Shown piece by piece: positions 2-9,714 of a stretch of DNA of 64,000 nucleotides. Source of the stretch: Obrimoposthia wandeli (taxonomy: Eukaryota). A program made the position numbers and the translations under genes. Position 1 is the stretch's first letter; every line of letters begins with the position of its first letter. The notes below the pieces were generated by a model. The model did not search any database and was not told the origin of the DNA. It was given only the letters and a program-made list of their open reading frames with translations. The stretch is from the NCBI GenBank assembly GCA_977020255.1, contig CDROCS010000253.1:4526001-4590000 (forward strand), in the 5' to 3' direction.

Positions 2-319
2 ATGGGCACGACAACATCAGTGGGAGGTCCACCGATTGCATTAGTTTACCAAAACAGTAAACTTAGTACCGTAAGAGCAGAGCTTGGGCTTTTTTTTCTT
101 ATTGGCACGCTGGTCTCTCTGGCTATGTTATTTGCATCAGGCAATATAAATTATGCTCAAGTACAACTAACTTTGCCTTTGATCCCTGCGTTATTTATTG
201 GTTTTGGCTTGTCATTTTACTTGGATAAATACCTAGGACAGCGTTATTTAAAGCCATTAATTGCTACGCTTTCGCTGACGTCCTGTGGTGTTATTTTGCT
301 GAAAGTCTACTTTTATTGA
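2..319 (+). CDS. TauE/SafE (sulfite-exporter-like) membrane protein, C-terminal part (5' end outside window)
   Basis: Hydrophobic ORF open at the window edge; GTTTSVGGPP motif and helix pattern typical of the second half of TauE/SafE proteins. Confidence 0.75.
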   Translation: MGTTTSVGGPPIALVYQNSKLSTVRAELGLFFLIGTLVSLAMLFASGNINYAQVQLTLPLIPALFIGFGLSFYLDKYLGQRYLKPLIATLSLTSCGVILLKVYFY

Positions 320-815: not shown

Positions 816-1193
816 TTATTGTGGTACAGCCGCATACGCAACCACTTCACACAGCATTTCTTCGCGTGCCAAACCAGCAACAATCATTGCCGCTCTGTTA
901 GGATAAGGTGCTTGAAAATACTCAGCATACACTTTGTTAAACGCTGGTAACTGCTCACGAGCAGTGACATAAATAAGGACTTGCGTAACATCGTCCATAG
1001 TCAGTTTGGCTGCTTCAATTGTGTGCTTGAAGTTTTCCATGGTCTGACGTGCTTGCGCTTCAATTCCACCTTCAACTACCTGCCCTTGTGCATTAATTGG
1101 GATCTGAGCGGTTGATAAGGTGTTATTAGCAATAATTGCCCATTCTAACGGTGCTTTAGAAGCAAATAATTCTGTTTTTACTGGTGTTTTCAT
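816..1193 (-). CDS. RidA/YjgF/UK114 family protein
   Basis: 125 aa; LSTAQIP, IEAQARQTMENF, FNKVYAEYF..PYPNRA and CEV motifs; conserved Arg in PNRA. Confidence 0.9.
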   Translation of the reverse strand: MKTPVKTELFASKAPLEWAIIANNTLSTAQIPINAQGQVVEGGIEAQARQTMENFKHTIEAAKLTMDDVTQVLIYVTAREQLPAFNKVYAEYFQAPYPNRAAMIVAGLAREEMLCEVVAYAAVPQ

Positions 1194-1346: not shown

Positions 1347-2906
1347 TTATAACCCTTGCTCATCGGCCATCTTGCGAGCAATTTGAGGTGCATTCCACAA
1401 GGATGGTAATAAAACCAAGGACACTGGAACTGCCGTTACCACAATAAATGATTGCAGTGCCGATATTCCGCCAGAGCCAATAGAGATAAGCAATGCTGCC
1501 ATAACACCCATCATAACGCCCCAAAATACGCGTAATGAACCCTGTGGAGAATCAGTCCCTGTCATTACCATAGATACTGAGTAGGTCATTGAATCACCCG
1601 TTGTCGCCACAAAAATAGTGGTTAATATCAAGAATAAGAACGATATTATCCAACCCAATGGCAACTGTTCTGTAATGGCAAGTAATGCCGCTGGTAAATT
1701 AAAACCAGTGAAAGGTTCTGAAATAACACCAGGTGTCGCTAACTCAAAAGCTAAACCACTGCCACCAACAATAGTGAACCAAAAACAGGTGATAACCGGC
1801 GCAACCACTGAAATAGTTAATATCATCTGACGGATAGTACGACCGCGAGATATACGGGCAACAAACATCGCCATTAACGGACCATAACCTAAAAACCATC
1901 CCCAAAAGAACACAGTCCACCAGTCAAGCCATGCAGTATTAGCACGGTAAGTCGCCATTGGAATAAAGTTATTTAGGTAAAGCCCAAAGGAGTGTAAATA
2001 ACTATCAAAGATAAAAGCAGTAGGACCAAAGATTAAAATAAATGCCATTAAGAAAATAGCGAGAACAATATTGATACTGCTTAAAAGTTGGATGCCTTTA
2101 GTAACACCACTCACTGCAGATAAGGTATAAATACAAATAAGACCAAACAATATCGCCAGCTGAGTCGTATAAGTATCAGGAATACCAAACAGTTTTTCTA
2201 AACCAAAGCTTACCTGTAAACCAAGAAAACCAATTGGGCCCACGGTACCTGCAACAACAGCGATCACACAACAAGAGTCAACAATAGTACCAAAAGCACC
2301 TTTCATCACTTTGTCGCCAAAGACAGGATAGAGTAAAGTACGCGGCTTTAACGGTAAGCCCTTATCATAATGTAAATGCATAAGCACTACGCCAGTCAAA
2401 CTACCCAAAATGGCCCAAGCTAAGAATCCCCAATGCATAAAGCTTTGTGCTAAAGCATTATAGGCGGCTTCTGCTGTGCCTGTTTCCCCACCGAAATGAG
2501 GAGGTGGGGAAGTAAAGTGCGCCATTGGTTCAGCTGCAGCCCAAAAGACACCGCCACCAGCAAGCAACGTACACATGATGATAGAAATCCATTTAAAGGT
2601 CGATATCTCAGGCGACTTTAACCCCCCTAACACAACACCACCAGTACGACTTATTGCCATAAAGATGCCAATAACAAAAGTCAGGAGCAGAAGTACTTGC
2701 CAGTAAGCGCCAAACATTTTGGTTGATGCAGCAAAAGCGGTATTAACCCAACTAGACATCATCTTAATATCATACAATGCTAATATAGCAAACAGCACCA
2801 GGGCGCCGCCACTAATCAAAAATACCGGTATATCTACCCCCTCTAGAAATTTGATTTTTGGCACTTTTACCTCGCTCTCTTCCACAACAGCTTTAGAAGT
2901 ATTCAT
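1347..2906 (-). CDS. BCCT (betaine/choline/carnitine) family transporter
   Basis: 519 aa, about 12 TM helices; AAEPM.HF, HWG..AWAI, WWTVFFWGWFLGYGP..MFVARISRGRTIR, FVATTGDS motifs. Confidence 0.95.
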   Translation of the reverse strand: MNTSKAVVEESEVKVPKIKFLEGVDIPVFLISGGALVLFAILALYDIKMMSSWVNTAFAASTKMFGAYWQVLLLLTFVIGIFMAISRTGGVVLGGLKSPEISTFKWISIIMCTLLAGGGVFWAAAEPMAHFTSPPPHFGGETGTAEAAYNALAQSFMHWGFLAWAILGSLTGVVLMHLHYDKGLPLKPRTLLYPVFGDKVMKGAFGTIVDSCCVIAVVAGTVGPIGFLGLQVSFGLEKLFGIPDTYTTQLAILFGLICIYTLSAVSGVTKGIQLLSSINIVLAIFLMAFILIFGPTAFIFDSYLHSFGLYLNNFIPMATYRANTAWLDWWTVFFWGWFLGYGPLMAMFVARISRGRTIRQMILTISVVAPVITCFWFTIVGGSGLAFELATPGVISEPFTGFNLPAALLAITEQLPLGWIISFLFLILTTIFVATTGDSMTYSVSMVMTGTDSPQGSLRVFWGVMMGVMAALLISIGSGGISALQSFIVVTAVPVSLVLLPSLWNAPQIARKMADEQGL

Positions 2907-2985: not shown

Positions 2986-3984
2986 CTAGTTCCCCAACAC
3001 TTGTGGTTTTAACCCCTCATCGAGTAAATTCAACCAGTTCATGCCCATGACCTTGGCGATATCTTCCGCCATAAAGCCTCGTTCTTGTAATCCTCGGGTA
3101 ATATTTGGAAAGTCACGGCTATCACGAAACCAAGATAACGGACGAGGCCAATCAGCATTTGCTTTTGAGCCTTCTCCATAATCCATTTCCTTTGACCAAC
3201 GTCCATTACGCATCCATTCAAGTACCGATAAAGGTTGTTCTTGACACAAATCTGTACCGATACCAATATGATCAATGCCCATTAAATCGGCAGTATTTGC
3301 CACCATATCGCAAAAATCATCCAAGCTACAATCAGGGCCATTTTTAAGATGAAACGGATAAAGGCTAAAGCCTAATAACCCACCTGATTCTCCCAATGCT
3401 TTTAGCACTGTGTCCGACTTATTGCGCTTGGCTTCATGGAAACTGTTCGGGTTGGCATGTGAGATCACAATAGGACGTTCAGAGATTTCTATCGCCTCTA
3501 AGGTACTACGCTCTCCACTGTGGCTCATATCTACCACCATACCAACACGGTTCATTTCCTTGATTACTTGTTTACCAAAGCGAGTAACACCACTGTCTTC
3601 TGCTTCATAACAACCACAAGCCAATAAGCTTTGATTGTTATAAGTCAGCTGCATAATCATCAGGTTGAGTTCACGCATGATCTCAACCATTGCTATATCA
3701 TCTTCAATAGGCGAGCAATTCTGCGCACCAAACATAATACCGACCTTGCCTAACTGTTTGGCAAGACGAATATCCGCCGTGCTTTTCACTGGCATGATCA
3801 AATCATGATGGAGCTCAAACTGGCGATTCCATTCACCTAATCGCAATAGTGTTTCTCTAATCTGTTCGTGGTAAACAACGGTGACATGCACCATGGTTAC
3901 ACCACCTTCTTTAAGCTGTTGAAAAATAGCCCGGTTCCAATTTGAGTACTGCAGGCCGTCAATGACAATAAGATCGTTATGCAT
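2986..3984 (-). CDS. M19 (membrane dipeptidase-like) amidohydrolase, atypical metal site
   Basis: 332 aa; LTYNNQS, EMNRVGMVVDMSH, ISHAN, RNKSD, HIGIGTD motifs. Confidence 0.9.
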   Translation of the reverse strand: MHNDLIVIDGLQYSNWNRAIFQQLKEGGVTMVHVTVVYHEQIRETLLRLGEWNRQFELHHDLIMPVKSTADIRLAKQLGKVGIMFGAQNCSPIEDDIAMVEIMRELNLMIMQLTYNNQSLLACGCYEAEDSGVTRFGKQVIKEMNRVGMVVDMSHSGERSTLEAIEISERPIVISHANPNSFHEAKRNKSDTVLKALGESGGLLGFSLYPFHLKNGPDCSLDDFCDMVANTADLMGIDHIGIGTDLCQEQPLSVLEWMRNGRWSKEMDYGEGSKANADWPRPLSWFRDSRDFPNITRGLQERGFMAEDIAKVMGMNWLNLLDEGLKPQVLGN

Positions 3985-3998
3985 AATGACTACTCGAT

Positions 3999-5441
3999 TT
4001 ATGAACGGATATAAGTGGTTTTTACGATAGTGTAAAATTCTTTTGCGTAGCTACCCATTTCACGTGAGCCAAAGCTAGAGTCTTTACGGCCACCAAAAGG
4101 TACGTGGTAATCAGTACCGGCTGTTGGCAAGTTCACCATCGCACAACCCGTTTGCGCATTGCGTTTGAAATGCGTTGCAGATTTAAGTGATTGCGTACAA
4201 ATACCACCCACTAAACCATAATTAGTGTCGTTCAGTGTAGCTAACGCTTCGTCATAGTCTTTCACTTTAATCACACAAGCGATCGGCGCAAAAGCTTCTT
4301 CACGGTTAATCGTCATTGCATTGGTGGTTTCGGTGAATAATGCTGGCGTTAGGTAATAACCTTCCGTTTCTTCAGTGATAACATCACCGCCACTCACTAA
4401 TTTACCACCTTCTTTTTTGGCAATTTCAAGATAGTTAAGGTTTTGCTTCATTTGACGAGCATCAGCAACAGCGCCAATATGAACGCCTTCACGTAAAGGA
4501 TGACCGACAACAAGTTGTTTCATTCTTGCAACAACCGCATCAACAAAACGATCGTGAATACCTTCAGTAACAATTAAACGCGATGAAGCAGTACATTTTT
4601 GACCTGTACCAAAGAAAGCACCGCCAACAGCACACTCAACAGCATTATCTAGATCCGCATCATCAAGCACGATGAGTGCATTTTTACTGCCCATTTCTAA
4701 TTGGCATTTTACTAAGTTTGTTGCTGTTGCTATGGCAACTTTCCGACCTGTTTCTAATGAACCAGTAAAAGTTAATGCGTTAATTTTTTTAGAGTTAATT
4801 AACAAGTCACCCACTTCTGCACCAGGACCCATTACTAGGTTAAACGTACCTGCAGGTAAACCTTGACGTGAGATGATTTCAGTTAATGCCCAAGCGCTCG
4901 CCGGTACTTGGTTTGCTGGTTTTAAAACAACCGAATTACCAAAGGCCAATGCCGGTGCAATTTTCCAAGCGGCAGTTGCCACAGGGAAGTTCCACGGTGT
5001 GATAATACCGACAACGCCAACAGGCTCTCTGCGGGTTTCAATTTCTATACCCGGACGAACTGAATCCGCAGTTTCACCCATTTGACGTAATACTTCAGCG
5101 GCATAATAATGGAAGAATTGACCAGAACGATAAATTTCGCCAGCGCCTTCAGGTAATGTTTTGCCTTCTTCTCGGGCTAACAACTTACCTAATTCATCTT
5201 TACGCGCAATAAGCTCATCACCAATGGCCATTAACACTGAATAGCGTTGCTCTAAGCCACTTTCTTGCCACTCAAGTTGGCCTTTAATCGCTGCGTCTAG
5301 CGCCGATTCGGCTTGTTCTTTGTTAGCTTGTGCGTAGTGACCAATAACATCACTGATGTCCGCTGGACTGATGTTAGCAAGTGAACTTGCGCCTTCTACC
5401 CATTCGCCATTGATGTAATTGCAAAAAATTGATTCAGACAT
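3999..5441 (-). CDS. NAD(P)-dependent aldehyde dehydrogenase, alpha-ketoglutaric semialdehyde dehydrogenase (YcbD)-like
   Basis: 480 aa from ATG 5441 (GGAGGT RBS); ITPWNFP, FTGS, EMGSKN, catalytic GQKCTA, EEAFAP, DYHVPFGGRKDSSFG. Confidence 0.9.
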   Translation of the reverse strand: MSESIFCNYINGEWVEGASSLANISPADISDVIGHYAQANKEQAESALDAAIKGQLEWQESGLEQRYSVLMAIGDELIARKDELGKLLAREEGKTLPEGAGEIYRSGQFFHYYAAEVLRQMGETADSVRPGIEIETRREPVGVVGIITPWNFPVATAAWKIAPALAFGNSVVLKPANQVPASAWALTEIISRQGLPAGTFNLVMGPGAEVGDLLINSKKINALTFTGSLETGRKVAIATATNLVKCQLEMGSKNALIVLDDADLDNAVECAVGGAFFGTGQKCTASSRLIVTEGIHDRFVDAVVARMKQLVVGHPLREGVHIGAVADARQMKQNLNYLEIAKKEGGKLVSGGDVITEETEGYYLTPALFTETTNAMTINREEAFAPIACVIKVKDYDEALATLNDTNYGLVGGICTQSLKSATHFKRNAQTGCAMVNLPTAGTDYHVPFGGRKDSSFGSREMGSYAKEFYTIVKTTYIRS

Positions 5442-5488
5442 AAATACCTCCATTAAATAATTGAAACTATTATAGGTAGTATGTTTTA

Positions 5489-5506
5489 ATAATAAAAATT
5501 AATAAA
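5489..5506. promoter_or_regulatory. Putative LysR binding site (T-N11-A)
   Basis: ATAATAAAAATTAATAAA in the divergent ALDH/LysR intergenic region; identical 18-mer at 6824-6841. Confidence 0.5.
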
Positions 5507-5531
5507 AAATATCTATTGATAAGGAATCCTT

Positions 5532-6467
5532 ATGTCACTACCTGAATTTAAAATAGCTCAGTTACGTCACTTCGTCTGGGTAGCTGAATTAAAAGGATTT
5601 CATACGGCGGCAGAAAAAGCTTGTCGAACTCAACCAGCAATATCTTTGTCCATTAGAGATCTAGAAAATAAACTGAGTACGGGACTTTTTGAAAAGCGTA
5701 ATGCAAAAACGTCAAATACTGAGCTAACACCTTTTGGTCAATATTTTTTACCTAAGGCGAAAGAACTTATTGCTCATCATGACAATGTTGCTCAGGATAT
5801 GGCATTGATGAGTGAACATAAAACAGGCCATTTACGTCTTGCTTCAGTACCCTCCATTGCGTGTAGGATGTTACCCGAGTTGTTATCAAAATTTATCGCT
5901 GATGTACCAGAGCTTCATATTAGTTTTTACGATGATAACTCCGAAGCGGTATTAAGAAAGGTTGAAAAACAACAAGTAGATATTGGGATCGCCAGTTTGC
6001 CCCATGGCCATGAACATGCCGACATCACTTTTACCCCTATCTGGGAAGATCAACTTGGTGTGGTTTGTCGTGAAGATCACCCTTTTGCGGATATGACTGA
6101 ACTACATTGGAAAGAGTTACGTAAACAACGATTGATCAGAAATGGTACCTCACGCCTACTTGAAGATACCGAAGCAGAGCCTTTATTAAGCGACTCGCAA
6201 TTTCTTATTTCTAATATGCTGTCATTAATCGCTATGCTTGAAGAAGGTCTTGGCATCACTACTTTACCCTGGTTTGCTTTTCCTAAAAATAATAACAAGC
6301 TCCGCTTTATCCCACTAACAACGCCTAAAATTGTCCGCCATATTGGGATAGTTCAGCTTAAAAATAAATCGTTATCCCCAGCAGCAGAAGCGCTGGCGAA
6401 CTTCATTTTGAAAAATACTAATCAAGATAAGGCTAAGGATGTGGAGTCTGACAACAACACTGAATAA
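5532..6467 (+). CDS. LysR family transcriptional regulator
   Basis: 311 aa; N-terminal HTH (QLRHF..VAELKGFHTAAEKACRTQPAISLSIRDLE) plus substrate-binding domain; divergent from the ALDH operon. Confidence 0.95.
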   Translation: MSLPEFKIAQLRHFVWVAELKGFHTAAEKACRTQPAISLSIRDLENKLSTGLFEKRNAKTSNTELTPFGQYFLPKAKELIAHHDNVAQDMALMSEHKTGHLRLASVPSIACRMLPELLSKFIADVPELHISFYDDNSEAVLRKVEKQQVDIGIASLPHGHEHADITFTPIWEDQLGVVCREDHPFADMTELHWKELRKQRLIRNGTSRLLEDTEAEPLLSDSQFLISNMLSLIAMLEEGLGITTLPWFAFPKNNNKLRFIPLTTPKIVRHIGIVQLKNKSLSPAAEALANFILKNTNQDKAKDVESDNNTE

Positions 6468-6517
6468 AAAAAGCACTATAACCAAAGCAAGAGTTGCCTT
6501 TGGTTATAGTGCTTTTT
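6468..6517. terminator. Long bidirectional terminator hairpin
   Basis: AAAAAGCACTATAACCAAAG...CTTTGGTTATAGTGCTTTTT (20-bp stem plus inner GCAA/TTGC) between the convergent LysR gene and small ORF. Confidence 0.85.
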
Positions 6518-6564: not shown

Positions 6565-6747
6565 TCAATTGTAACCACGCACATAACTTTCCGTACTAAC
6601 ATCATTACAAAGTGCTTGCTCATTATTGCTTACATGCTGTTGGCTATTTTTAGTAGACGGGTGTTTATTCTCGCTAACAGCGACTTCTTTATGCTCTAAA
6701 TTTTTGGCGTTGAAATAATTACTATCGTTATTAGTTAGTGAATTCAT
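6565..6747 (-). CDS. Small polar hypothetical protein (60 aa, ends ESYVRGYN)
   Basis: GAGG RBS 7 nt before ATG 6747; terminator downstream; putative LysR box upstream. Confidence 0.55.
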   Translation of the reverse strand: MNSLTNNDSNYFNAKNLEHKEVAVSENKHPSTKNSQQHVSNNEQALCNDVSTESYVRGYN

Positions 6748-6823
6748 GGTGCACCTCAATCAATGTTTGCGGTTTACAAAGTACCGCTGTTGAATAGGCT
6801 ATGATTATAGTAAGCATTTTTTG

Positions 6824-6841
6824 ATAATAAAAATTAATAAA
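6824..6841. promoter_or_regulatory. Second copy of putative LysR binding site
   Basis: 18/18 identity to 5489-5506. Confidence 0.5.
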
Positions 6842-7257
6842 TAATATACAACGATAAAAAAAACTTATTCATGTTAGTAAAAATAAAATATCCGCAATAA
6901 AATTTTAGCTAATAAATTTATCCGATAATCTATCTGTTACCTTGTCATTAAACTCAATATCCCTCAAACAAAAAATATAATTGATATTTAAATAATAGCC
7001 ATATTATTCAAACAACTAACTACTACCAATAAGTTTTCCTTATCAGCTGATAGACCTTATTGGCTTGTATAAAGTGACAAAACTGGCCAAAAATAACATC
7101 ATATTCAATGAGGTCATTTTATCGACTTCATTAATAACCATGTTGATTTTATAAAGCGTCAACGGGTTAATACTGAATTTACTTCAAGACAAGAACAACA
7201 AGAAAATCGAAGCTAATTCAGATAACATATTTTGTATAGCAAATGAGGAGCAGTAAA

Positions 7258-8967
7258 ATGACAACAAATGCAGCTATCCACTCATCGCTTTGGGGTGAAA
7301 ATTCTTTACCACTTCGTCCTGCAAGTCAGGTGATGAAATTAGAGCGCCTTGGCGCTTACCACCAAAGTCGCCTAAGTTTCATGCGTACTTTGGTACGTCG
7401 AATATTTCGTGAACGCTGGAAGATTGAACCTTCCGTTTTTGAACTCGACCATGATGGCTACGGCACGGTTGTCTATGAAGTACAAGCTCCACATGGACTA
7501 TTCAGTTTTGTACTGTTTTCTGATTACCTTTCACCCGATGAACGAAATGACCGTGTAATTGCCACCAAGTGGGACCTTACTATGGCCCTAGTTGAAGGTA
7601 AGGTTGACCAAGCATATATTGAACAATTACGTGAAAACGTACCTAAACAAGAAGCTGGACGCGTAGATGCCCGTGTTTTTGTTTTATCTCGTGCCAACCG
7701 CAGCGCACGTAACTTTGATTATGTTGTAAACCAACTTGCTGCAGGGGAACAACCTGATGTAGCTAAAATTATTGAAGTGGGTTATTTATATCGTACTACT
7801 GCTGTTTATGGCAGCGGTAAACTCGGTATGGCTGATTGGGAAAAAGTGAAAGAAAAGCATAAAGATTTTGCCCGACCATTTGCCGGTGAAATGTTTGTTT
7901 GTTTGATGCTGCGCAACTTCAGTCTATTACAAGTTGAACATATTGCTCGCCATAAAAAGCCCGATACATTTAATCTGATGAAGCCTGAAATAAAGCGCTA
8001 CTTTGGTATTGGTAATTCAACGGGTTTAGGTATGGCGCCTTATTTGGTCAATCACCCACTGCTTATCAACCAATGGGTAGAAATGCGTGAATTGGCTTTA
8101 GCACGTATTCGTGCACTCGGCAGCGTTAACCAACAAGTACGTGAAACAATTAGTCAATTGATTGACCGCAGCGCACAACATACACTTGAAACACAGACTG
8201 AAGATGCGTGGCAAACCAATAATAATAAAGCGGTCATTAAAGATATGGCCTGCCTGAAAGATCGTATTGAAGGTGGTTTTGATTCATGGAACGAATTGGT
8301 TGAGCATAGTGAACAACATTGCTCATTACAGGGCCAAGAAATGTTAGTGTCTTGTATGCTCGAAATATACCCTGAACTTGTTGATGAATTAGAAGATTTT
8401 CACACAGCAGAAGAGTTTTTAGACCTTGATCCACTTATGCCTGCTGAGCAACTTAAAAGTATCATCGAAAAACGTTATGACTGGGCGCTAGCAATAGATT
8501 TTGACGCCGAAGGCGCTCGAGAAACTTACTGGTATCGTTCAGAAGAAAAAATGGAGCCTCGTTTAGGTATTGTTGCTGATATTGAAGGTAAAAAGAAACA
8601 AATGGCACTGGGTGTCGGGTATGCCGTACGTAAATGTTATAACCAATTAATCGATTATATCGCGCTAAATCCAGAGCACACCACCGCTCGATTTATGGTT
8701 GCCTATCCAAAATTACGTGGCATTGTCAGACGTATTCAAGGCATGAACCGCTGTGTTTATGGAGACATTCAAGCAAACCTGTTAGACAGAGAAGTATTAC
8801 CAATGCACTTATTACGCGCTAAATTAGCATTTTTTGGTGTGAGTAAGTTTGATCCCCGTTCTCGTTTATGGGTACGTAATACCATGTTCCAGGGTGCGCC
8901 ACTGTTAGAAGAAATTGGCCAAGCATTTAATGACGACTGGTTTATGCCACTAGCACCAAAGCAATAG
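7258..8967 (+). CDS. Hypothetical protein, 569 aa, probable enzyme of unknown family
   Basis: Long clean ORF, GAGGAG RBS before ATG 7258; soluble composition; motif-like Gly-rich segments (YRTTAVYGSGKLGMAD, GIGNSTGLGMAPYLVNHP). Confidence 0.85.
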   Translation: MTTNAAIHSSLWGENSLPLRPASQVMKLERLGAYHQSRLSFMRTLVRRIFRERWKIEPSVFELDHDGYGTVVYEVQAPHGLFSFVLFSDYLSPDERNDRVIATKWDLTMALVEGKVDQAYIEQLRENVPKQEAGRVDARVFVLSRANRSARNFDYVVNQLAAGEQPDVAKIIEVGYLYRTTAVYGSGKLGMADWEKVKEKHKDFARPFAGEMFVCLMLRNFSLLQVEHIARHKKPDTFNLMKPEIKRYFGIGNSTGLGMAPYLVNHPLLINQWVEMRELALARIRALGSVNQQVRETISQLIDRSAQHTLETQTEDAWQTNNNKAVIKDMACLKDRIEGGFDSWNELVEHSEQHCSLQGQEMLVSCMLEIYPELVDELEDFHTAEEFLDLDPLMPAEQLKSIIEKRYDWALAIDFDAEGARETYWYRSEEKMEPRLGIVADIEGKKKQMALGVGYAVRKCYNQLIDYIALNPEHTTARFMVAYPKLRGIVRRIQGMNRCVYGDIQANLLDREVLPMHLLRAKLAFFGVSKFDPRSRLWVRNTMFQGAPLLEEIGQAFNDDWFMPLAPKQ

Positions 8968-8976
8968 GAGAGTTCT

Positions 8977-9714
8977 GTGAATATTTCAATGAATGAATTA
9001 AAAGCAGCGCTACGCAGATGCTTTGAAGCAAGTGATTACTTTGTCGGTAATTATGAAGATGCCGCCAACATGGTGTTATGGTTAGAAAAACATGGCTTAA
9101 ATGGCTTGAGTGAATTCAAATTAGCGTTACCTTATATTGGCGAAGATAAAAAAAAGCCATTAAGCAATGTAATATATGAAGATAGTACGTCAGCAACTAT
9201 TGATGCTCACCATCGTAGCGCGCTTAATTGTATTGCGGCCGCAGTAGACCTAGCACATGCCAAAGCATTAGAAAGTGGTATAGCCACAGTAACAGTACAT
9301 AACTGCCATAACAGAATTTTTATTCTCAAAGCACTTACTGATCGTGGTCGTAGTGGCATTAGTGCTGCAGCTTACTGGCAAAATGGTAGCGATACCGTGA
9401 CCGAACATACTGCTGCCATTCGCTCAGGTCAACGCTACCCGAGTTACAGCGAAGGAATTACTAACCTAAAAAATAGTGATAATGACAAACAAGCGCTTAC
9501 TATTATTTGTAGTTCTCGAGTAGATTTAACCTCATCTTTACAAAATAGTAAAAGTCACTTTATTAGCCCTAAACAAGTTGAAAGCAACAAAGAACATACC
9601 GTTGAACATGGTATTGAAATTGATGAAGATGTTTGGAAAGAAATTAATAAAATAGGCTTAGGCGTGTTGGTTGAAAACACTGAGCGTTCACGAAAAGATG
9701 CCGGTGGCAATTAA
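8977..9714 (+). CDS. DUF3726-like protein with degenerate Ldh_2 (malate/L-lactate/DpkA reductase)-like features
   Basis: GTG start with AGGAG RBS, 9 nt after the previous stop; AVDLAHAKALESGIATVTVHNCHN resembles the Ldh_2 segment A..KA...GI..V.V.N.NH. Confidence 0.6.
   Translation: MNISMNELKAALRRCFEASDYFVGNYEDAANMVLWLEKHGLNGLSEFKLALPYIGEDKKKPLSNVIYEDSTSATIDAHHRSALNCIAAAVDLAHAKALESGIATVTVHNCHNRIFILKALTDRGRSGISAAAYWQNGSDTVTEHTAAIRSGQRYPSYSEGITNLKNSDNDKQALTIICSSRVDLTSSLQNSKSHFISPKQVESNKEHTVEHGIEIDEDVWKEINKIGLGVLVENTERSRKDAGGN

What the first reader, a model, noticed from the sequence alone, without database searches (positions are those of the whole stretch)
7258..8967. 569-aa protein with no recognisable family, probably the key enzyme of the cluster
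Long soluble ORF with a strong RBS and motif-like Gly-rich blocks (RLGAYHQSRLSF, YRTTAVYGSGKLGMAD, GIGNSTGLGMAPYLVNHP, KFDPRSRLWVRNTMFQGAP). It shows no Rossmann, P-loop, Fe-S or PLP signature that I can recognise. It sits 9 nt before the DUF3726-like gene, suggesting a two-subunit enzyme. If the cluster degrades an onium compound, this is the natural candidate for a new C-N or C-S cleaving activity (inference).
Basis: inference. Interest (0 to 1): 0.72.

Follow-up and report, generated by a model that had tools for sequence, protein, structure and literature searches.

The report
HomB-like homarine breakdown enzyme subunit
This 569-residue protein is real and has no recognised family or solved fold, but it is almost certainly HomB, the large partner of the two-protein enzyme that starts bacterial breakdown of the marine metabolite homarine (operon published in March 2026), so its identity is known while its chemistry is not.

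Summary
The ORF at 7258-8967 (+) is real: 569 aa, GAGGAG ribosome-binding site, and a DUF3726 gene 9 nt downstream. It matches nothing in Pfam, NCBIfam, PADLOC or PDB sequences. A confident model (pLDDT 93.6) has no solved structural relative.

The family is large and strongly conserved, and it is always paired with a DUF3726 gene; in some bacteria the two are fused. It sits with an M19 hydrolase, an aldehyde dehydrogenase, a BCCT transporter, a regulator and RidA in Gamma- and Alphaproteobacteria and in low-GC contigs.

This gene set, and the ~1,700/~700 nt gene pair, match the homABCDER/homT homarine operon of Ferrer-Gonzalez et al. (Nat Microbiol 2026, PMC13236597). There, homB is required for growth on homarine and the product is N-methylglutamate.

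I could not align directly to SPO3189 or ACFLL8_11500, so the identification is strong inference (about 0.85-0.9).

New here: the partner has a shortened type-2 malate/lactate dehydrogenase fold (Z about 19), not a flavin reductase fold. HomB has no conserved Cys and one conserved His. The published TgnAB-like flavin oxygenase analogy is therefore unsupported.

The scan reached the same reading on other pieces of this assembly (s1-241205, s1-241127).

Verdict: already known gene, unsolved mechanism.

The parts
7246..7251 (+). Ribosome-binding site GAGGAG, 6 nt before the ATG at 7258
   Evidence: Read directly from the sequence.
7258..8967 (+). homB-like gene: 569-aa protein of an orphan family, inferred large subunit of the homarine ring-opening enzyme
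   Evidence: family size and conservation. (no family match). (confident model, no solved relative). (synteny). (paper: homB is about 1,700 nt).
8977..9714 (+). homA-like gene: 245-aa DUF3726 protein with a shortened type-2 malate/lactate dehydrogenase (Ldh_2) fold, inferred small subunit
   Evidence: DUF3726 E 3.4e-21; Ldh_2 E 8.7e-09. (model pLDDT 86; Z 18.3-18.9 to all 8 Ldh_2 representatives, next best Z 6). (hhalign to a full Ldh_2). (paper: homA is about 700 nt and adjacent to homB in 97.7% of genomes).
5532..6467 (+). LysR-family regulator, homR-like, divergent from the aldehyde dehydrogenase operon
   Evidence: HTH_1 plus LysR_substrate. (conserved position).
3999..5453 (-). Aldehyde dehydrogenase, homD-like
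   Evidence: Aldedh E 2e-153; below the cut-off of every NCBIfam equivalog. (synteny).
2986..3984 (-). M19 'membrane dipeptidase' family hydrolase, homC-like
   Evidence: Peptidase_M19 E 8.7e-81. (synteny).
1347..2906 (-). BCCT transporter, homT-like
   Evidence: BCCT E 2.2e-155. (synteny).
816..1193 (-). RidA / Rid-family enamine-imine deaminase, last gene of the minus-strand operon; one candidate for the auxiliary homE
   Evidence: It is 71-74% identical even in the low-GC fused-type operons, where it is the first gene.
2..319 (+). C-terminal part of a TauE/SafE-family membrane protein, cut by the window start. It travels with the cluster, on the other side of it in Oceanospirillales. Second candidate for homE.
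6468..6517 (.). Perfect 20-nt-stem hairpin right after the regulator gene, probably a terminator
   Evidence: (I1).
5469..5533 (.). Divergent promoter region between the aldehyde dehydrogenase and regulator genes; reference copy of a 65-nt repeat with core ATAATAAAAATTAATAAA
   Evidence: (D1).
6804..6868 (.). Second copy (78% identical) of the 65-nt promoter-region repeat, about 390 nt upstream of homB. Candidate regulator operator for the homB-homA operon (inference).
   Evidence: (D1).

Best explanation
The gene encodes the Colwellia orthologue of HomB. HomB is the large subunit, and the DUF3726 protein HomA the small subunit, of the enzyme that performs the first, ring-opening step of homarine (N-methylpicolinate) catabolism.

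Inferred pathway: homarine enters through the BCCT transporter (HomT) and HomB/HomA open the pyridinium ring with the N-methyl group retained. The M19 hydrolase (HomC) and aldehyde dehydrogenase (HomD) process the open-chain products towards N-methylglutamate. RidA handles enamine/imine intermediates. A heterotetrameric sarcosine-oxidase-like N-methylglutamate dehydrogenase encoded elsewhere on the chromosome yields glutamate.

Shown here: the gene, its family, its obligate pairing and occasional fusion with DUF3726, the conserved operon, the absence of any known family or solved fold for HomB, and the Ldh_2 fold of HomA.

Taken from the paper: homB, homC, homD and homR mutants cannot grow on homarine, HomA and HomB are predicted to form a heterodimer, and N-methylglutamate is the product.

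Inferred: that this gene is orthologous to the paper's homB; that HomB is the catalytic core; and that the chemistry differs from a flavin reductase plus oxygenase pair. One possibility is hydride or substrate handling at an Ldh_2-like site of HomA, coupled to ring cleavage in an Arg-rich, Gly-loop pocket of HomB.
For: 1. Gene content equals the published operon: regulator, 'glycine betaine transporter', peptidase-like HomC, aldehyde-dehydrogenase-like HomD, homA of about 700 nt next to homB of about 1,700 nt, and a variable homE. Here the pair is 738 and 1,710 nt, with M19, ALDH, BCCT, LysR and RidA alongside.

2. In Porticoccaceae and Arenicella loci the order ALDH-M19-BCCT-U569-DUF3726 mirrors Cobetia locus tags 11515 down to 11495. 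In Hellea the order ALDH-M19-U569-DUF3726 mirrors SPO3191 down to SPO3188.

3. The module persists at 39-43% identity in low-GC contigs and in fused forms.

4. Natural U569-DUF3726 fusions of about 800 aa exist, for example in Arcobacter. U569 and DUF3726 lie on the same contig in 10 of 10 cases in this assembly. This fits the paper's predicted heterodimer.

5. The family occurs in taxa the paper names: Porticoccaceae, Oceanospirillales genera, and Halomonadaceae, the family of Cobetia.

6. The paper found its homA and homB HMMs specific and its homC and homD HMMs promiscuous. That matches an orphan family plus DUF3726 on one side and M19 and ALDH on the other.

7. SPO3188 was annotated 'hypothetical protein'.

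8. The window's contig carries two SoxD-type loci, consistent with sox plus mgd.

9. HomB is better conserved than HomA between classes (46-59% against 23-38%). It has an invariant Gly-rich strand-loop-helix and 11 conserved Arg residues.
Against: No direct alignment to SPO3189 or ACFLL8_11500 was possible. The paper's supplements are not held, and neither organism appeared in the three name-bearing searches or the cluster look-up.

The paper says HomA has FAD-binding motifs. The DUF3726 protein here shows none in Pfam and folds as Ldh_2.

No expression data were found for this locus, and there is no growth test for this Colwellia. The catalytic role of HomB rests on conservation and elimination only.
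Confidence: 0.85

Rival explanations
1. HomB is not the catalyst. It would be a scaffold, a substrate-capturing or regulatory partner, and catalysis would reside in the Ldh_2-fold DUF3726 subunit. That family includes NAD(P)H-dependent reductases of cyclic imine-2-carboxylates, and homarine resembles those substrates.
For: The DUF3726 protein has a genuine enzyme fold: Z 18.7 to delta1-piperideine-2-carboxylate reductase 1wtj and Z 18.3-18.9 to seven other Ldh_2 enzymes. An HG motif and an NCHNR motif align with Ldh_2 motifs in the two-gene forms. HomB has no recognisable cofactor or metal signature.
Against: HomB is far more conserved than HomA across classes. The Ldh_2-like His and NCHNR residues are lost in the fused forms and in Hellea. 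Only S4, E7 and the C-terminal S-x3-A-G tail are conserved in HomA. HomA lacks about 100 residues of the Ldh_2 fold. HomB has many invariant polar and glycine positions typical of an active site.
Confidence: 0.1
2. The protein belongs to the same family as HomB, but in Colwellia the cluster acts on a different N-methylated zwitterion, for example another pyridinium betaine or a related osmolyte, rather than homarine.
For: Identity to Alphaproteobacterial members is only 46-51%. Substrate specificity has been shown experimentally only for Cobetia and R. pomeroyi. Neighbouring accessory genes differ between lineages: a full-length Ldh_2, a GbcA-like Rieske oxygenase, or TauE.
Against: The core five-gene module and its order are conserved from low-GC bacteria to Alpha- and Gammaproteobacteria. 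The paper scored such loci as hom operons in 11,755 genomes, and all nine homarine-growing isolates carried them.
Confidence: 0.06
3. One reading: an unrelated, undescribed C-N or C-S lyase that releases TMA, DMA or DMS from an onium compound.
For: A BCCT transporter and a LysR regulator are typical of betaine and DMSP clusters. There is no known family for the protein.
Against: The cluster content matches the hom operon one to one. In that pathway the N-methyl group stays on the nitrogen through ring opening. No known demethylase or lyase partner is present.
Confidence: 0.03

Closest known systems
HomB/HomA of the homABCDER(+homT) homarine catabolic operon (Cobetia sp. OBi1 ACFLL8_11500/11495; Ruegeria pomeroyi SPO3189/SPO3188; Ferrer-Gonzalez, Heal et al., Nat Microbiol 2026, PMC13236597)
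   Same: Same gene sizes (about 1,700 and 700 nt) and same adjacency. Same neighbours: peptidase-like, aldehyde dehydrogenase, betaine-type transporter, regulator and a variable extra gene. Same gene order in the single-strand arrangements. Same taxa. Both are orphan but specific families. The partnership is predicted in the paper and shown here by fusions.
   Different: Sequence orthology was not tested directly here. This Colwellia splits the module into two divergent operons, ALDH-M19-BCCT-RidA on one strand and LysR then homB-homA on the other. The paper reports FAD-binding motifs in HomA, which I do not see in the DUF3726 partner.
TgnA/TgnB, the two-component enzyme that opens the ring of trigonelline (the analogy drawn in the homarine paper)
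   Same: A two-protein first step on an N-methylpyridinium carboxylate. It is followed by hydrolase and aldehyde dehydrogenase steps, and the N-methyl group is retained through ring opening (for the analogy).
   Different: Neither protein here has a flavin reductase, flavin monooxygenase or Rieske domain. The small subunit has an Ldh_2 fold and the large subunit has no solved relative. So it may work like TgnAB in outcome, but it is not a member of that enzyme class.
Type-2 malate/lactate dehydrogenase family (Ldh_2, PF02615), including DpkA delta1-piperideine-2-carboxylate reductase and AllD ureidoglycolate dehydrogenase; applies to the partner only
   Same: The partner matches the fold end to end: Z 18.3-18.9, rmsd about 3 A over 211-222 residues. 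Sequence similarity covers the N-terminal 130 residues. Full-length Ldh_2 genes lie beside the operon in Arenicella and Hellea.
   Different: The partner has 245 aa against about 340 in Ldh_2 enzymes and scores below the Pfam cut-off (35.4 against 38.8 bits). Ldh_2 motif residues are not conserved across the DUF3726 family. It is always tied to HomB, which is unrelated to Ldh_2.

Membership tests
HomB (hom operon, PMC13236597) | A gene of about 1,700 nt directly adjacent to a homA gene of about 700 nt | tested here: met
   1,710 nt and 738 nt with a 9-nt gap.
HomB (hom operon, PMC13236597) | homC (peptidase-like) and homD (aldehyde dehydrogenase-like) co-located within 10 kb, plus a regulator and a betaine-type transporter | tested here: met
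   M19, ALDH, BCCT and LysR lie within 6 kb. They are conserved in all informative related loci.
HomB (hom operon, PMC13236597) | Sequence orthology (reciprocal best hit) to SPO3189 / ACFLL8_11500 | not testable with these tools
   The supplements are not held. Neither organism was listed. Relatives at 64-69% identity to a Marinobacter member are present in Halomonadaceae, the family of Cobetia.
HomB (hom operon, PMC13236597) | Physical partnership with HomA | tested here: met
   The evidence is indirect. Natural fusions of about 800 aa carry DUF3726 at the C-terminus. The two lie on the same contig in 10 of 10 cases, three of them fused.
HomB (hom operon, PMC13236597) | Required for, and induced by, growth on homarine | not testable with these tools
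   No RNA runs hold the locus.
Two-component flavin-dependent or Rieske ring-opening oxygenases (TgnAB-like) | A flavin reductase, flavin monooxygenase or Rieske/non-haem iron domain in one of the two proteins | tested here: not met
   No such Pfam or NCBIfam hit in either protein. HomB has no conserved Cys and only one conserved His. The partner folds as Ldh_2.
Ldh_2 (PF02615), for the DUF3726 partner | Full-length fold with the conserved catalytic and NAD(P)H-binding motifs; Pfam gathering score | tested here: inconclusive
   The fold is matched (Z about 19). However, the Pfam score is 35.4, below the 38.8 cut-off, about 100 residues are missing, and motif residues are not conserved across the family.
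Anti-phage defence proteins (automatic UniRef and Atlas names 'ZorC EH domain', 'PcfJ-like', 'restriction endonuclease') | A match to a defence-system profile, or a defence-gene neighbourhood | tested here: not met
   PADLOC gave no hit. The neighbourhood is catabolic in every locus.

The most novel reading that the evidence does not exclude
HomB/HomA may be a new class of N-heteroaromatic ring-opening enzyme. A large subunit with a fold unrelated to any solved structure would work with a degenerate Ldh_2-fold subunit, with no flavin reductase, Rieske or classical metal-binding signature. If so, the published TgnAB-like flavin oxygenase model would be wrong. One alternative is a dearomatising hydride transfer or covalent hydration at the 2-carboxy-iminium, followed by cleavage in an Arg-rich pocket closed by the invariant C-terminal tail of HomA.
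Probability: 0.35. Interest if true: 0.7.

Novelty: already known. Interest (0 to 1): 0.3.

Why it matters
Homarine is one of the most abundant small nitrogen-containing metabolites in marine plankton and animals. According to the 2026 paper, the hom operon is carried by dominant ocean bacteria including SAR11, SAR116, SAR92 and Roseobacters. The gene's role is therefore already on record, and this Colwellia copy adds nothing in kind.

What remains open is the biochemistry of the first step. This analysis sharpens that question. The large subunit has no solved structural relative or cofactor signature, and the small subunit is a cut-down Ldh_2-fold protein rather than a flavin reductase. A biochemical and structural study could therefore reveal new ring-opening chemistry.

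Tried and rejected
Family scans. Pfam at E up to 10, and on 65 family members one by one, gave only scattered single-member noise. NCBIfam and PADLOC gave nothing.

PDB by sequence. A single-sequence search gave one hit at E 0.9. A profile search gave only P450 BM3 variants at E 0.016-0.04, over 100 residues of the helical part. This is one protein deposited many times and is not backed by any fold match, so I treat it as chance.

Fold searches for HomB. Foldseek against PDB had best E 0.11 and TM about 0.1. VIA-align against 48,161 chains had best Z 7.7, covering only a helical hairpin at residues ~288-346. The ESM Atlas returned only the protein's own family and the DUF3726 fusion cluster. 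'No known fold' therefore holds for the whole chain only.

Automatic names in public databases ('ZorC EH domain', 'PcfJ-like', 'restriction endonuclease', 'protein kinase family') were rejected as unsupported.

Profile comparison of HomB against HomA and against a full-length Ldh_2 showed no relation.

Attempts at a direct name link to Cobetia or R. pomeroyi. One cluster look-up and a 301-genome sample of the Marinomonas order were also run. These found the right families but not those two organisms.

Expression. No RNA run holds the stretch.

Sox/mgd loci.
Full report
**Observation**

The longest mechanical ORF begins at an ATG at 7243. Two things favour 7258 as the true start. GAGGAG at 7246-7251 lies 6 nt upstream of the ATG at 7258, and most homologues are 569 aa. 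The next gene (GTG at 8977, 245 aa) starts 9 nt after the stop. It matches DUF3726 (E 3.4e-21) and, below the cut-off, the first third of Ldh_2.

**No known family, no solved fold**

- The protein has no hit in Pfam, even at E 10, and none when 65 family members are scanned individually.
- It has no hit in NCBIfam release 20 or PADLOC.
- PDB sequences give nothing credible, whether searched by single sequence or by profile.
- An AlphaFold model built on a 65-sequence alignment is very confident: mean pLDDT 93.6, pTM 0.93.
- Foldseek against the PDB finds nothing (best E 0.11, TM about 0.1).
- An exhaustive VIA-align pass over 48,161 chains peaks at Z 7.7, on a helical hairpin only.
- The ESM Atlas returns only the protein's own family and a cluster in which it is fused to DUF3726.
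The 'no relative' statement therefore applies to the whole chain.

**The family**

- The word search saturates at 8000 hits. Identity is 73-96% across Colwellia, Pseudoalteromonas, Thalassotalea, Neptunomonas, Amphritea, Marinobacterium, Motiliproteus and Reinekea.
- The exhaustive search finds 1331 representative clusters at 50% identity, 347 of them at E<=1e-30.
- Members also occur in Sporosarcina and Arcobacter, Porticoccaceae, and Marinobacter and many Halomonadaceae.
- 27 of 301 sampled genomes of the Marinomonas order carry it.
- Across 65 sequences down to 28% identity, the invariant positions are S40, G69, L160, R219, G250, G252, G258 and G527.
- Another 50 positions are at least 90% conserved. 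They include 11 Arg, one His (H266), D106, E278, E361 and E433, and no Cys or Lys.
- The motif G250-x-G-N-x-x-G-x-G258 spans a predicted strand-to-helix junction. This is a typical anion- or phosphate-binding geometry (inference).

**Context**

In 34 related genomic loci the protein is always followed by the DUF3726 gene wherever the contig continues past it.

- In Alteromonadales and Oceanospirillales the arrangement is RidA-BCCT-M19-ALDH on one strand, and LysR then U569-DUF3726 on the other.
- In Porticoccaceae and Arenicella it is ALDH-M19-BCCT-U569-DUF3726 on one strand.
- In Hellea and Caulobacterales it is ALDH-M19-U569-DUF3726.

The 125-aa gene at 816-1193 is a Rid-family deaminase.

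The window's assembly is metagenome-like (1.35 Gb, 6912 contigs). It holds ten copies of the protein, each with DUF3726 on the same contig, and three are fused into open frames of 810-825 aa. The distant copies are 39-43% identical, and some lie in contigs of 27-30% GC. Even these sit in RidA-ALDH-M19-BCCT-U569(-DUF3726) operons.

Fusion proteins of about 800 aa carry DUF3726 at the C-terminus and are annotated in Arcobacter. The two-subunit idea is well supported.

**Identification**

A literature search found Ferrer-Gonzalez, Heal et al., Nat Microbiol 2026 (PMC13236597). The paper reports the following.

- In Cobetia sp. OBi1 a homarine-induced cluster (ACFLL8_11490-11520) encodes homE, homA, homB, a 'glycine betaine transporter' homT, homC (predicted peptidase), homD (aldehyde dehydrogenase-like) and homR.
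- R. pomeroyi has homA-homB-homC-homD-homR as SPO3188-3192.
- homA is about 700 nt and homB about 1,700 nt, and they are adjacent in 97.7% of 11,755 genomes.
- HomA and HomB are predicted to form a heterodimer.
- Mutants in homB, homC, homD and homR cannot grow on homarine.
- HMMs for homA and homB were specific, whereas those for homC and homD were promiscuous.
- Porticoccaceae, Oceanospirillaceae, Vibrionales, Rhodobacterales, SAR11 and SAR116 carry or express the genes.

Every one of these descriptors fits the cluster studied here. The single-strand arrangements I found reproduce the order of the Cobetia and Ruegeria locus tags. SPO3188 was originally annotated 'hypothetical protein', as expected for a DUF3726 protein.

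The window's contig also has two SoxD-type loci. This is compatible with the sox plus mgd pair that the paper links to conversion of N-methylglutamate to glutamate.

I could not obtain the Cobetia or Ruegeria sequences, so orthology is a strong inference and not a direct test. I put it at about 0.85-0.9. After I had found the paper, a look-up showed that earlier agents of this scan reached the same reading on two other pieces of this assembly.

**What it probably does**

In R. pomeroyi the pathway needs only homABCD. HomC and HomD belong to well-understood hydrolase and aldehyde dehydrogenase families. By elimination, the ring-opening step falls to HomA/HomB, which is also the paper's view.

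The paper reports labelled intermediates of formula C7H9NO5, C6H9NO4 and C6H9NO3, and the product N-methylglutamate, with the methyl group retained. My reading of these formulas (inference) is as follows.

- The ring is cleaved so that one ring carbon remains on nitrogen as a one-carbon acyl group and the other end is an aldehyde.
- The aldehyde is oxidised by HomD.
- The one-carbon unit is removed by the M19 amidohydrolase-type enzyme HomC.
- An enamine/imine of N-methylglutamate is left, which is either reduced or handled by RidA.

A full-length Ldh_2 gene sits next to the operon in Arenicella and Hellea. The Ldh_2 family includes a cyclic imine-2-carboxylate reductase (PDB 1wtj). From my own knowledge, unverified here, that enzyme also acts as an N-methyl-amino-acid dehydrogenase. 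This is consistent with the proposed last reduction.

**What is new relative to the paper**

The DUF3726 partner (model pLDDT 86) matches all eight Ldh_2 representatives at Z 18.3-18.9, with rmsd about 3 A over 211-222 of its 245 residues. The next best match is Z 6 (Foldseek E 1e-11 to 1e-9). It is a shortened Ldh_2 fold.

I find no flavin-binding domain in it. I therefore cannot reproduce the paper's statement that HomA has FAD-binding motifs. Across the DUF3726 family only S4, E7, V232 and the C-terminal tail S238, A242 and G243 are conserved. The HG and NCHNR motifs that align with Ldh_2 motifs are lost in the fused forms and in Hellea.

HomB is unrelated to HomA or to Ldh_2. It is much better conserved between classes than HomA (46-59% against 23-38%).

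Together these points make HomB the likelier catalytic core. HomA would be an auxiliary subunit whose invariant tail may complete the active site (inference). They also give no support to the TgnA/TgnB flavin reductase plus oxygenase analogy.

**Regulation (in passing)**

A 65-nt piece of the divergent promoter region between the aldehyde dehydrogenase and LysR genes (5469-5533) recurs at 78% identity at 6804-6868, about 390 nt upstream of homB. A perfect 20-nt-stem hairpin (6468-6517) follows the regulator gene. This suggests one regulator serving both operons (inference).

**Verdict**

The protein is a key enzyme subunit that works with the DUF3726 product in catabolism of an N-methylated zwitterion. 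However, the system was published in March 2026 as the homarine operon, and the expected chemistry is pyridinium ring opening, not methylamine or sulfide release.

- Novelty class: already known.
- Interest: 0.3. The residual interest lies in the unsolved mechanism and the apparently new fold.

Noticed in passing
window 5469-5533 and 6804-6868: A 65-nt direct repeat (78% identical, core ATAATAAAAATTAATAAA) links the aldehyde dehydrogenase/LysR divergent promoter region to a site about 390 nt upstream of homB. It is a candidate shared operator of the LysR regulator.
   Followed up: partly
window 6565-6759 (-): A small 64-aa ORF lies in the 790-nt AT-rich gap between the regulator and homB. It has an inner ATG at 6746 preceded by GAGG, and it sits just downstream of the repeated promoter-like segment. 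Coding status is unknown.
   Followed up: no
L029:12577-13584 and L030:2657-3655 (also L031:2728-3726): A full-length Ldh_2 family dehydrogenase gene (333-336 aa; the L029 and L030 copies match Pfam Ldh_2 at E 1e-93 to 1e-98, and the L031 ORF is the same size in the same position but was not scanned) lies directly beside the hom-like operon in Arenicella and Hellea/Caulobacterales, which lack the RidA gene. It may be the reductase for the last imine/enamine step.
   Followed up: partly
L028:6478-7434: In a Porticoccaceae genome assembled from a metagenome (MAG), a GbcA-like Rieske oxygenase alpha subunit follows the DUF3726 gene directly.
   Followed up: no
window 2-319 (+); L009:12710-13444: A TauE/SafE-family membrane protein travels with the cluster. 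It lies beyond RidA in Colwellia-type loci and directly after the DUF3726 gene in Oceanospirillales. I could not settle whether the paper's homE is this gene or RidA.
   Followed up: partly
P0195, P0198, P0210, P0224, P0236; L078 (open frame 1143 aa): Many family members are 840-960 aa or longer. They carry a C-terminal extension that has no Pfam hit, or only a faint DUF3726 signal. These may be diverged HomA fusions or fusions to something else.
   Followed up: partly
G000 (whole assembly): The window's 'genome' is 1.35 Gb in 6912 contigs and holds ten separate hom-like loci with GC from 27% to 46%, so it is a mixed community assembly. The window lies on a contig of more than 4.5 Mb from a Colwellia (95-96% protein identity to Colwellia entries).
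   Followed up: partly
L002, L004, L005, L007 (Colwellia loci): The gap between the regulator gene and homB is 2.1-3.3 kb in several other Colwellia, against 0.79 kb here. This spacer is a hot spot for insertions.
   Followed up: no
G000:C253:1813092-1813340 and 2278054-2278302: There are two SoxD-family genes on the same chromosome. This is compatible with one sarcosine oxidase and one N-methylglutamate dehydrogenase operon.
   Followed up: partly
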